Source: Paragordius varius
Taxonomy: Eukaryota > Animalia > Nematomorpha
DNA length: 64,000 bases
NCBI GenBank assembly: GCA_964247055.1
Contig: OZ176052.1
Location: 9,176,001 to 9,240,000 of the forward strand
Reading direction: 5' to 3'
Shown here in pieces: positions 56,506-58,619 of the stretch (its first letter is position 1; each line of letters starts with the position of its first letter). A program made the translations under genes and the position numbers. Under the pieces are notes generated by a model that searched no databases, was not told the DNA's origin, and saw only the letters and a program-made list of their open reading frames with translations.

Positions 56506-58619
56506 CTAAAGAAAATAATCTGGTGTGCGACGCGTAACGTGTGGTTCCCCTTTTCGTGGTGCAGGATCAAATTGTAAACTAAAACAAATGTAAAAGATTT
56601 AGTATTTCGTATAAACAATAAACGATCCATAATAAAAAAGCATGTGTTTACATAGACTTAATTTTGTCTATGCACTTAACAAATTAAAAATGAAATCGAA
56701 AAAATTATTTAAACCAAAGAAAGGTTGACTATGTTAACAAATGTAATAAATAAAAGATTCATACACTAAAAAACTAAATCAAAATTGCCTTATACCCTAT
56801 AAATGGTCAGCAAGTATTGTAATAAAAAACATTTAATAATAAAAATAAAATGCAGCCAATAGCTAAATAAATAAGTTAATTAATTTGTATAATTAAATAA
56901 AAAAATATGTTTAAGAATTGTTTACTATTGATTCGTTTTATTAAAAAGAAGAATTCAACAAAAAAAATTACAATGAATAATTGAGTAAATCATCTAATTC
57001 CATTATGGCTGCTTGATTCCCACATCGATAACAATAATTTGGAGCACTGAAAATGGTGACTACGTTTTTGTCATGACACCAATTATAACCCTATTATACA
57101 ATAAAACTTGGTTAAAATGCCAATATTAAAAAATATTATGCTAAAACAATTTGGGCGCATCAATCATTCCAACATACAACAAAAATAAATATATTGGAAA
57201 CAAATCCAGGTATTTCTCAGTCACAAATGATTCAAAATCAATGATCGTTTTTATAAACAAACAATTATTTGGTCAAGAAACTCAAATTATACCTCCATGA
57301 CTAATTGATGTGCCCGAGATATGAGGGTGAGTCCATTGGTATGATTGAATGTTTCTGAGATATCTTGACCAAAAGTATAGCCAGCTCCTCGAGGGGAAAT
57401 GCCCCAACCACCCCGATCGTCGGGATCAGACCATAACAAATCACACATGGGTCCCTAACATACATACATATAATGATGCTTGAAAATTAAATTTTGAATA
57501 TGCATTTTATATTGCAGTAAAAATTGGTATTATAAAAACGTGGTAAAGAAATATTTTAATATTAAAGTCAGCCATATTTCCTTGATTATTACAGTTGTGA
57601 GATTTAGAATAGAGTATGTTATACATATGTCATTATTTTAAAACCCAAAACGATAAGTTTTATAAAAAAAATCACGGCTTAAAAAATATTTAACTTTTAT
57701 TATTGCATCTAGCACATTGGGGCATTAATACATCTTTCTTAGGAATTTATTTTTTTCTTTTAACATTTGCCCATTAATTTTTGCGTTTATTTTTATTAAT
57801 TCCTACATCACTGTAAATTAAAATTAAAAAATTCGTATAATTTTAAATCTCCCCCAATTATTGAAATAGATTTTCTACGCATTTTTGTCATTTTCATTTA
57901 GTGTAATATTTTGTGTAAATGCTAATTACTTCGTGTGGAACTTCTTGTATCCGATCGATAGCCCTAACATTATCCAATGTGTCTATAGACGGTGACAAAC
58001 CGCCATGTAAGCAGAATATCTATAAAGTGTAAAATTTAAGAAACATCGTATATTAAAGATTTATTATTATGTCATTACCTGTCCATCGACTAGTGCTGTT
58101 AAAGGGAGATAATCAAAAAGATCTGTAAAATATTTCCAAACATTCGGATTTCCATATTTACGCAAGCATTCATCGTAAAAGCCATAAACTTGGGTAATTT
58201 GGCGACTTTCGTGATTCCCTCGTAAAATTGTGATTCTGTCTTTATGTCTTACCTGATTGTTAGAAAAAATATATAAACTTTTAATGCAACTAATAGGGAA
58301 ACGCTTTCAACAGAATAATATCCTCGATCAACGTAATCGCCCATAAACAAATAATTTGTATCGGGGGAATGCCCACCTATGCGAAATAATTCCATCAAGT
58401 CGTGAAATTGACCATGAACATCTCCACATACAGTGACAGGACACGATACATCTTGGACGTTAGATTCTTTGGAAAGTATTTCTTTGGCCTAAAATAAATA
58501 AAACAATTTACTTTTTCACATAGAGTCTTAACCTGATTTTCAGTTAAAGGTTTACATTCCATTAATAATGTAATCCATTGGTCCAATTCTTTGTAAGAAT
58601 TTTTTATCGAATCTTCCAT
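56506..58619 (-). CDS. PPP2CA: Serine/threonine protein phosphatase 2A catalytic subunit, 7 exons, 311 aa
   Basis: Exons 58619-58512, 58488-58279, 58252-58079, 58019-57930, 57454-57293, 57090-56972 and 56578-56506. GDVHG, GDYVDRG, RGNHE and SAPNY motifs; the C-terminus TRRTPDYFL is diagnostic of PP2A-C rather than PP4/PP6. Confidence 0.98.
58253..58278 (-). other. 26-nt GT-AG micro-intron (PP2A-C intron 2)
   Basis: gtttatatattttttctaacaatcag joins [19 protein letters not shown] and contains a CTAAC branch-point-like motif. Confidence 0.93.
58489..58511 (-). other. 23-nt GT-AG micro-intron (PP2A-C intron 1)
   Basis: gtaaattgttttatttattttag joins [16 protein letters not shown]. Confidence 0.95.

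What the first reader, a model, noticed from the sequence alone, without database searches (positions are those of the whole stretch)
58253..58511. Obligatory 23-nt and 26-nt spliceosomal introns in the essential PP2A catalytic subunit gene
Seen: a nearly invariant PP2A-C protein is restored only by excising 23 nt (58489-58511) and 26 nt (58253-58278), both GT...AG; neither length is a multiple of 3, so retention frameshifts. Knowledge: the breaks fall at LCEK|AKEIL and VALK|VR, and the internal and last exon sizes (210, 174, 90, 162, 119, 73) match my recollection of vertebrate PPP2CA, so these look like ancestral introns that shrank. Most animals have minimal introns of about 40-70 nt; 20-30 nt introns are known mainly from ciliates, nucleomorphs and dicyemids. 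Inference: this lineage has a spliceosome adapted to micro-introns even though the same gene keeps introns of 59, 475, 202 and 393 nt.
Basis: partly seen in the sequence, partly recalled or inferred. Interest (0 to 1): 0.88.

Follow-up and report, generated by a model that had tools for sequence, protein, structure and literature searches.

The report
Two tiny introns in PP2A gene
An essential phosphatase gene in this AT-rich animal genome can only be read if segments of 23 and 26 bases are cut out as introns, at sites where a coral and a nematode have ordinary introns. Introns this short are published for only two other animal groups, and the cutting was not shown in RNA here.

Summary
On the minus strand, 58619-56506 encodes an intact 311-aa PP2A catalytic subunit in 7 exons (108, 210, 174, 90, 162, 119, 73 nt). 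Its frame is kept only if 58511-58489 (23 nt) and 58278-58253 (26 nt) are removed. Both segments are GT...AG, phase 0 and 81-87% A+T, and retaining either one gives an early stop.

Both sit at ancient intron positions:
- The coral Stylophora has the same six positions, phases and internal exon sizes.
- The nematode Brugia keeps introns 1 and 2, at 267 and 300 nt.
- More than 45 genomic exon calls from other organisms end at the same edges.

An unrelated ELMOD gene in this window has 21- and 23-nt GT-AG introns as its first two introns.

Best reading: real U2-type introns shrunk close to the physical minimum (confidence 0.85). I found no RNA to show the splicing, and I could not verify the organism. 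Composition fits the published Gordionus hairworm genome.

The scan has found this intron class many times before on other DNA of this genome. Published sub-30-nt animal introns are limited to dicyemids and myxobolid myxozoans. Flatworms have 5'-clustered microintrons of about 37 nt. I class this as a new member of a known kind.

The parts
56506..58619 (-). PP2A catalytic subunit gene, ATG to stop: 7 exons, 311 aa
   Evidence: Spliced model has no internal stop. Top PDB matches are human PP2A-C alpha. Pfam Metallophos hits. Motifs GDVHG, GDYVDRG, GNHE, HGG and TPDYFL are present.
58512..58619 (-). Exon 1 (108 nt), ending in ...LCEK
58489..58511 (-). Intron 1: 23 nt, GTAAATTGTTTTATTTATTTTAG, phase 0, 87% A+T
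   Evidence: Same position as intron 1 of Stylophora (2015 nt), Brugia (267 nt) and L001 (about 3.8 kb). Ten exon-1 ORF calls from other organisms end at LCE[K/Q]|V.
58279..58488 (-). Exon 2 (210 nt), AKEIL...VALK
   Evidence: 66/70 residues identical to human PP2A-C alpha. Same 210-nt exon in Stylophora, Brugia and L001.
58253..58278 (-). Intron 2: 26 nt, GTTTATATATTTTTTCTAACAATCAG, phase 0, 81% A+T
   Evidence: Same position as intron 2 of Stylophora (104 nt), Brugia (300 nt), L001 (about 1.1 kb) and TARA scaffolds (about 3 kb). About 45 exon-2 ORF calls end at VALK|V.
58259..58263 (-). CTAAC inside intron 2: candidate branch site, with the branch A 7 nt before the 3' splice site
   Evidence: Read directly from the sequence. 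Its function is inferred, not shown.
58079..58252 (-). Exon 3 (174 nt), VRHKDR...VDGQ
58020..58078 (-). Intron 3: 59 nt, GT-AG, phase 0
57930..58019 (-). Exon 4 (90 nt)
57455..57929 (-). Intron 4: 475 nt, GT-AG, phase 0
57293..57454 (-). Exon 5 (162 nt)
57091..57292 (-). Intron 5: 202 nt, GT-AG, phase 0
56972..57090 (-). Exon 6 (119 nt)
56579..56971 (-). Intron 6: 393 nt, GT-AG, phase 2
56506..56578 (-). Exon 7 (73 nt including the TAG stop)
11129..11149 (-). Same intron class in another gene: ELMOD intron 1, 21 nt, GTAACTTAATTATATAATTAG, with two in-frame stops, between LLKK and LWNN
   Evidence: The downstream exon matches Pfam ELMO_CED12.
10969..10991 (-). Same class: ELMOD intron 2, 23 nt, GTATAAATAATACTTAATTTTAG, phase 2; removal gives ...GILGLASLVYF...
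   Evidence: That LVYF is the ELMOD sequence here rests on my recollection of human ELMOD1/2, not on a tool result.

Best explanation
The 23-nt and 26-nt segments are genuine, constitutively removed U2-type (GT-AG) spliceosomal introns. They are the first two of the six ancestral metazoan introns of the PP2A-C gene, shrunk in this lineage to near the smallest size a spliceosome can handle.

Shown here:
- They are required for the reading frame.
- They have canonical ends.
- They occupy ancestral positions and phases.
- The rest of the gene is intact.

Inferred:
- They are recognised across the intron (intron definition). The only signals are a reduced 5' site (GTA/GTT), a branch A about 6-7 nt before the 3' AG (CTAAC in intron 2), and no polypyrimidine tract after the branch.
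- Retention is caught by nonsense-mediated decay, because each retained intron gives an early stop.
- Such introns are a 5'-proximal class in this genome. Intron lengths run 23, 26, 59, 475, 202, 393 nt along PP2A-C, and the first two introns of ELMOD are 21 and 23 nt.
For: - Exact GT...AG ends, phase 0, and restoration of the frame.
- The exons tile PP2A-C with no gaps at any junction.
- Exon 2 is 66/70 identical to human PP2A-C alpha.
- All catalytic motifs and the C-terminal TPDYFL are intact, with no other lesion in 933 coding nt.
- Stylophora has exon sizes 111/210/174/90/162/119/73 and the same six positions and phases. Brugia keeps introns 1 and 2.
- L001 (GCA_977065575.1) has 3.8-kb and 1.1-kb introns at the same two sites.
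- About 45 exon-2 and 10 exon-1 genomic ORF calls from other organisms stop at the same edges, with read-through Q (CAG) before the exon and V (GT) after it.
- The chance of GT...AG on both segments is about 1.6e-5.
- The introns are 81-87% A+T, against 61% for the CDS.
- Retention gives stops after 74 aa or 115 aa.
- ELMOD in the same window has 21- and 23-nt GT-AG introns.
- Introns under 30 nt are spliced in other animals (PMC13644364, PMC6543705).
Against: - No RNA or cDNA from this organism could be retrieved, so removal is not shown.
- The 5' site of intron 2 (GTTTAT) is weak. The exon that follows begins CAG|GTAAGA, which looks like a strong competing donor.
- Intron 1 has no clear branch motif.
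- I could not check the rest of the genome for a second PP2A-C copy.
- Within this window most introns are not tiny. WDR26 has introns from over 100 nt to kilobases, and H1 has one of 94 nt.
Confidence: 0.85

Rival explanations
1. This is a young unprocessed pseudogene. The two introns were cut down by deletions to a size that can no longer be spliced, and a working PP2A-C gene lies elsewhere in the genome.
For: Splicing was not shown. In most animals, introns under 30 nt are treated as unspliceable or as annotation errors (cited in PMC13644364). The donor of intron 2 is weak.
Against: There is no other lesion in 311 codons, and every catalytic motif is intact. Both remnants keep exact GT...AG ends. 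A second, unrelated gene in the window has the same feature. No other PP2A-C copy has been noted in the part of the genome scanned so far (this is weak evidence). Earlier scan notes list the same size class in dozens of housekeeping genes (unchecked leads).
Confidence: 0.05
2. This is an assembly or sequencing artefact: the 23- and 26-nt segments are not in the real genome.
For: No reads were available to check. The segments are low-complexity and AT-rich.
Against: Assembly errors would not insert 23 and 26 nt with GT...AG ends exactly at two ancestral phase-0 intron positions. If the segments were absent, both ancestral introns would have been lost cleanly, which the sequence gives no reason to suppose. 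The PP2A locus lies outside the window's repeats.
Confidence: 0.02
3. The introns are real but inefficiently or conditionally spliced. Retention followed by nonsense-mediated decay would then act as a dosage control on PP2A-C, rather than the introns being constitutively removed.
For: Weak splice signals, and a competing GTAAGA at the acceptor of intron 2. Every retained form gives an early stop.
Against: Nothing points specifically to regulation. The same size class also occurs in ELMOD, which suggests a general genome property rather than a gene-specific switch.
Confidence: 0.07
4. The segments are removed by something other than the spliceosome, for example as germline-limited DNA cut out of somatic nuclei (ciliate-IES-like), or skipped by the ribosome.
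For: None specific. This is listed only because removal at the RNA level was not shown.
Against: GT...AG ends at ancestral spliceosomal intron positions and phases. The alternative equivalent excisions are not TA-bounded on both sides. The neighbouring introns of the same gene are ordinary GT-AG introns.
Confidence: 0.01

Closest known systems
Ultra-short introns of dicyemid mesozoans (Ogino et al. 2010, cited in PMC6543705; PMC6736024)
   Same: GT-AG introns mostly under 30 nt (median 27 bp) at conserved positions in an otherwise conservative exon/intron structure. The genome is about half repeats.
   Different: In dicyemids about two thirds of all introns are that short. In this window only the first two introns of two genes are. 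Dicyema has 36.7% GC and fast-evolving proteins. This window has 27.7% GC, and its PP2A-C is about 92% identical to those of molluscs.
Ultra-short introns of myxobolid myxozoans (PMC13644364, MBE 2026)
   Same: Introns of 20-27 bp at conserved positions, reduced splice-site motifs (GTa...AG), weakly conserved A residues shortly before the AG, and no polypyrimidine tract. That paper's validation logic was the same as the one used here: conserved positions between conserved exons.
   Different: Myxobolid genomes are small (about 75 Mb) and short introns are the norm there (median 22-27 bp). Here the short introns coexist with 200-475-nt and kilobase introns in a repeat-rich region. That paper found no other animal case among 51 genomes.
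Flatworm microintrons (Opisthorchis felineus and other Platyhelminthes, PMC6530080)
   Same: A separate short-intron class in large, repeat-rich genomes that also have kilobase introns. The microintrons cluster together, lie preferentially at the 5' end of genes, often lack a polypyrimidine tract, and are missed by annotation software with default minimum intron lengths.
   Different: The flatworm peaks are at 37 and 90 bp, not 21-26 nt.
Tiny introns of ciliates and nucleomorphs (Paramecium about 25 nt, bioRxiv 10.1101/2021.08.05.455221; Stentor 15-16 nt, PMC9505925; nucleomorphs, PMC6009652)
   Same: The same length range, removed by a conventional spliceosome. Retention is normally revealed by an early stop; here 4 of 4 well-supported cases are either not a multiple of 3 or carry in-frame stops.
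   Different: These are unicellular lineages with uniformly tiny introns and compact genomes or nuclei.
Human ultra-short introns and SPF45-dependent short-intron splicing (PMC4463651, PMC8363638)
   Same: This shows that a metazoan spliceosome uses a distinct factor requirement (SPF45 instead of U2AF) for introns with a truncated polypyrimidine tract. That is a possible model for a two-class system.
   Different: The human cases are 43-65 nt, about twice as long.

Membership tests
U2-type GT-AG spliceosomal intron | GT at the 5' end and AG at the 3' end | tested here: met
   Both segments meet this. It is the only GT-AG choice among the excisions that give the same mRNA.
U2-type GT-AG spliceosomal intron | Homologous position and phase to introns of the same gene in other species | tested here: met
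   Stylophora, Brugia and L001, plus about 55 genomic exon calls.
U2-type GT-AG spliceosomal intron | Branch-point adenosine in a U2-complementary motif upstream of the 3' splice site | tested here: inconclusive
   Intron 2 has TTCTAAC, with the branch A 7 nt before the AG. Intron 1 has only TTTAT-type candidates. No functional test was possible.
U2-type GT-AG spliceosomal intron | Polypyrimidine tract between the branch point and the AG | tested here: not met
   There is no room for one. Only 4-6 nt separate the candidate branch A from the AG. The tract is likewise missing or extremely short in myxobolid and dicyemid short introns (PMC13644364).
U2-type GT-AG spliceosomal intron | Absence from the mature mRNA | not testable with these tools
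   No RNA of this organism was retrievable.
Animal ultra-short (<30 nt) intron genomes (Dicyemida, Myxobolidae) | Intron length under 30 nt at conserved positions | tested here: met
   23 and 26 nt in PP2A-C; 21 and 23 nt in ELMOD.
Animal ultra-short (<30 nt) intron genomes (Dicyemida, Myxobolidae) | Short introns are the majority (median intron 22-27 bp) | tested here: not met
   In this window, 4 of 6 PP2A-C introns are 59-475 nt. The H1 intron is 94 nt. The WDR26 introns range from over 100 nt to kilobases.
Animal ultra-short (<30 nt) intron genomes (Dicyemida, Myxobolidae) | Reduced, compact genome | tested here: not met
   Only 4 recognisable genes in 64 kb, and 35% of the window is intra-window repeats, including an 8.2-kb tandem duplication.
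Flatworm-type 5'-clustered microintrons | Microintrons adjacent to each other and nearest the 5' end of the gene, beside long introns | tested here: met
   PP2A-C introns 1 and 2; ELMOD introns 1 and 2, following an ATG-started first exon. The sample is only two genes.
Flatworm-type 5'-clustered microintrons | Length mode around 37 bp | tested here: not met
   The lengths here are 21-26 nt.
PP2A catalytic subunit (PPP family) | GDxHG, GDxVDRG, GNHE and HGG motifs plus the C-terminal TPDYFL tail | tested here: met
   All are present. The best PDB matches are PP2A-C alpha. The protein is 88-93% identical to animal PP2A-C.
Unprocessed pseudogene | Frameshifts or stops outside the intron-like segments, or loss of catalytic residues | tested here: not met
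   None were found in 311 codons.

The most novel reading that the evidence does not exclude
This genome belongs to a third, independent animal lineage with routinely spliced introns under 30 nt. It is neither a dicyemid nor a myxozoan, and is probably a horsehair worm. Unlike the two published cases, it is not a compact genome. The 21-26-nt introns form a separate, 5'-proximal class beside TE-filled kilobase introns. Extreme intron shrinkage would therefore not be a by-product of genome reduction, but of a position-dependent process, either cap- or promoter-proximal intron definition or a local deletion bias. A corollary follows: standard gene finders and BUSCO runs miss such genes, so part of the reported 'rampant gene loss' and roughly 70% BUSCO completeness of hairworm genomes would be an annotation artefact.
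Probability: 0.5. Interest if true: 0.8.

Novelty: new member of a known kind. Interest (0 to 1): 0.62.

Why it matters
A 2026 survey of 51 animal genomes concluded that introns under 30 nt exist only in myxobolid myxozoans and in Dicyema, both tiny parasites with reduced genomes (PMC13644364).

Here an almost invariant, essential gene needs 23- and 26-nt introns in a repeat-rich, gene-poor region. The same gene also carries 200-475-nt introns. If RNA confirms the splicing, three things follow:
- The lower size limit of the bilaterian spliceosome is not tied to genome compaction.
- One spliceosome, or two modes of it, must handle both classes within a single transcript.
- Annotation pipelines with default minimum intron lengths will break or miss such genes. 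That bears directly on claims of massive gene loss in the lineage concerned. The Gordionus genome preprint reports 71.6% BUSCO completeness in genome mode and never mentions introns.

Tried and rejected
1. Looking for the same species' full-length protein or RNA.
- A profile search with the exon pieces tiled on references (A2) gave a best match of 91.5% identity.
- Looking inside the ten closest 90% clusters gave at most 93%.
- An exon-2 fragment search gave at most 94%.
- An exon-1 ORF search found no close relative.
- PP2A-C is so conserved that this species' protein is probably absorbed into other clusters.

2. Exact look-ups of three ORFs, as a bacterial-style gene caller would call them: none is on record.

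3. Scans of metagenome contigs for both exon-exon junction sequences: no hit. This is uninformative.

4. The exact look-up of the spliced 311-aa product was left out. That sequence has no reference, and long sequences may not be typed into a call.

5. A homology-free scan for GT...AG segments of 18-35 nt that fuse two ORFs. Control dinucleotide pairs gave as many or more hits, and the filter missed PP2A intron 1. I rejected it as uninformative in this AT-rich DNA.

6. Pfam on short ELMOD pieces, to prove contiguity at the junctions. Only the middle exon scores, so the junctions rest on frame logic and recollection.

7. A PP2A-C tree to place the organism. It is unresolved, except that the sequence falls outside the sampled nematodes (97/98 support).

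8. Rfam on the window: no snRNA or any other RNA gene.

9. A vertebrate gene structure: the locus came without DNA.

Full report
**Observation.** The region reads on the minus strand. Translating 58700-56900 in three frames shows PP2A-C sequence jumping between frames. Seven exons join into a 936-nt CDS with no internal stop, encoding 311 aa:
- 58619-58512
- 58488-58279
- 58252-58079
- 58019-57930
- 57454-57293
- 57090-56972
- 56578-56506

Exon sizes are 108, 210, 174, 90, 162, 119 and 73 nt. The introns are 23, 26, 59, 475, 202 and 393 nt, all GT...AG, with phases 0, 0, 0, 0, 0 and 2. Intron 1 is 58511-58489, GTAAATTGTTTTATTTATTTTAG. Intron 2 is 58278-58253, GTTTATATATTTTTTCTAACAATCAG. Left unspliced, the frame stops after 74 aa. 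With only intron 2 retained it stops after 115 aa.

**Is it PP2A-C, and is the gene intact?**
- Exon 2 alone matches human PP2A-C alpha at E = 6e-40, with 66 of 70 residues identical.
- Exons 2 and 3 hit Pfam Metallophos.
- Aligned with five reference sequences, the seven exon pieces tile the whole protein with no gap or overlap at any junction. The only indel is two extra residues near the N-terminus.
- The motifs GDVHG, GDYVDRG, GNHE, HGG and [11 protein letters not shown] and the TPDYFL tail are all present.
- Identity to full-length animal PP2A-C is 84-93%.

**Are the two positions ancestral?** Three independent lines say yes.
- The exon-2 search returned genomic ORF calls from many other organisms. 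In about 45 of them the conserved sequence begins right after a read-through Q (the CAG acceptor) at AKEIL, and ends at VALK followed by V plus junk (the GT donor). Ten exon-1 ORF calls likewise end at LCE[K/Q]|V.
- Exact mapping of the annotated proteins onto their loci gives, for the coral Stylophora pistillata, exons of 111/210/174/90/162/119/73 nt and introns after the same codons with the same phases. Its intron 1 is 2015 nt and its intron 2 is 104 nt. The nematode Brugia malayi keeps introns 1 (267 nt) and 2 (300 nt) at the same codons. It has lost introns 3 and 6 and gained one of its own.
- An unnamed NCBI animal assembly (GCA_977065575.1, locus L001) has exons of 210/174/90/162 nt, with introns of about 3.8 kb and 1.1 kb at the two sites. 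TARA ocean scaffolds have about 3 kb at site 2.

I confirmed it against a coral rather than a vertebrate, because the frog locus came without DNA.

**More than chance?** GT and AG occur at 4.2% and 3.8% of dinucleotide positions in the window. I allowed for the 2 and 3 excisions that give the same mRNA. The probability that both required excisions have GT...AG ends is then about 0.0032 x 0.0049 = 1.6e-5. The segments are 87% and 81% A+T, against 61% for the CDS.

**Is it a property of the genome or of this gene?** The window holds three other recognisable genes.
- A linker-histone gene at 18329-19240 (+) has one 94-nt intron.
- A WDR26-like gene at 40950-54010 (+) has introns ranging from over 100 nt to kilobases. 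Its first intron is about 1 kb.
- An ELMOD-like gene lies on the minus strand.

In ELMOD, an ATG-started first exon ends ...TLLKK. It is followed by GTAACTTAATTATATAATTAG (11149-11129, 21 nt, two in-frame stops) and then LWNN..., which matches Pfam ELMO_CED12. Then GTATAAATAATACTTAATTTTAG (10991-10969, 23 nt, phase 2) restores ...GILGLASLVYF.... That this is the expected ELMOD sequence is my recollection of human ELMOD1/2. A third, 22-nt candidate (10918-10897) is uncertain.

So in two of four genes, the first two introns are 21-26 nt and the later introns are longer. All four well-supported tiny introns give an early stop if retained.

**What I could not get.** I found no RNA, and no second assembly of this organism. 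The profile search, the cluster listings, the fragment searches, the exact ORF look-ups and the junction scans all failed to find the species. The decisive look-up of the spliced 311-aa product could not be made, because that sequence has no reference.

The organism could not be placed from this gene. The tree is unresolved, except that the sequence lies outside the sampled nematodes. The window has 27.7% GC, and 35% of it is intra-window repeats. That resembles the published Gordionus montsenyensis genome: 288 Mb, 26.93% GC and 63.8% repeats. Earlier notes of this scan call the genome a horsehair worm's. I did not verify that.

**Mechanism.** The best reading is ordinary U2-type splicing of introns shrunk close to the physical limit.
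- Intron 2 carries TTCTAAC, with the branch A 18 nt from the 5' end and 7 nt from the AG.
- Intron 1 and the ELMOD introns have A residues in TTTAT / CTTAAT contexts 5-7 nt before the AG.
- None of them has room for a polypyrimidine tract after the branch.
- The longer introns of the same gene have CTAAA / TTAAC-type motifs 17-25 nt upstream of T-rich 3' ends.

This matches what is described for myxobolid and dicyemid short introns: reduced GTa...AG motifs, and weakly conserved A residues just before the AG (PMC13644364). One oddity is that exon 3 begins CAG|GTAAGA. That is a near-perfect donor-like sequence sitting at the acceptor of intron 2, whose own donor (GTTTAT) is weak.

**Comparison with what is known.**
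- Dicyemids have a median intron of 27 bp (PMC6543705) and a mean of 38 bp in a genome that is 49% repeats (PMC6736024).
- Myxobolids have medians of 22-27 bp, and no other case was found among 51 animal genomes (PMC13644364).
- Flatworms have microintrons with peaks at 37 and 90 bp. These cluster at the 5' ends of genes, often lack polypyrimidine tracts, and sit beside 3-kb introns in a 684-Mb genome (PMC6530080).

The present case combines the length class of the first two groups with the architecture of the third. None of the held papers on hairworm genomes mentions intron length. Cunha et al. 2023 is not in the library and could not be checked.

**Verdict.** Splicing itself remains unshown. 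The scan has already found the same intron class many times on other DNA of this genome. This finding adds a very clean example, because the protein is nearly invariant and the gene structure is identical to a coral's. I class it as a new member of a known kind.

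Noticed in passing
window 10969-11149 (-): The ELMOD-like gene has 21-nt and 23-nt GT-AG introns as its first two introns, after an ATG-started first exon at 11482-11150. A third candidate of 22 nt (10918-10897) would shorten a normally conserved loop and is doubtful.
   Followed up: partly
window 58247-58255 (-): The acceptor of PP2A intron 2 is immediately followed by exon sequence GTAAGA (codons for Val-Arg). 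The junction therefore reads CAG|GTAAGA, a near-consensus donor, while the intron's real donor is the weak GTTTAT. This may be a competing splice site or a coincidence of coding.
   Followed up: no
window 20244-36813: An 8.2-kb unit is present twice in direct tandem (20244-28427 and 28446-36813) at 91-97% identity. Related copies at 74-88% identity lie at 1-1486 and 62277-63282. In all, 35% of the window matches another part of itself.
   Followed up: partly
window 18329-19240 (+): A linker-histone (H1/H5) gene in two exons, with a 94-nt GT-AG intron (18742-18835) that contains a (TA)n run. This shows that not all first introns here are tiny.
   Followed up: partly
window 40950-54010 (+): A WDR26/GID7-like gene. 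Its first exon is a 389-codon, low-complexity, Asn/Ser/Thr-rich ORF that ends in the start of the LisH motif. Its first intron is about 1 kb, and no tiny introns were seen.
   Followed up: partly
PP2A and ELMOD micro-introns (58489-58511, 58253-58278, 11129-11149, 10969-10991): All four well-supported tiny introns either are not a multiple of 3 in length or, in the 21-nt case, carry two in-frame stops. Retention therefore always gives an early stop, the pattern described for Paramecium tiny introns. The sample is far too small to test.
   Followed up: partly
L007 (Brugia malayi PP2A-C locus): The nematode gene keeps ancestral introns 1, 2, 4 and 5. It has lost introns 3 and 6, and has an extra intron inside ancestral exon 3 (after ...RQITQ). 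Its intron 4 maps one base off, at phase 1 instead of 0.
   Followed up: no
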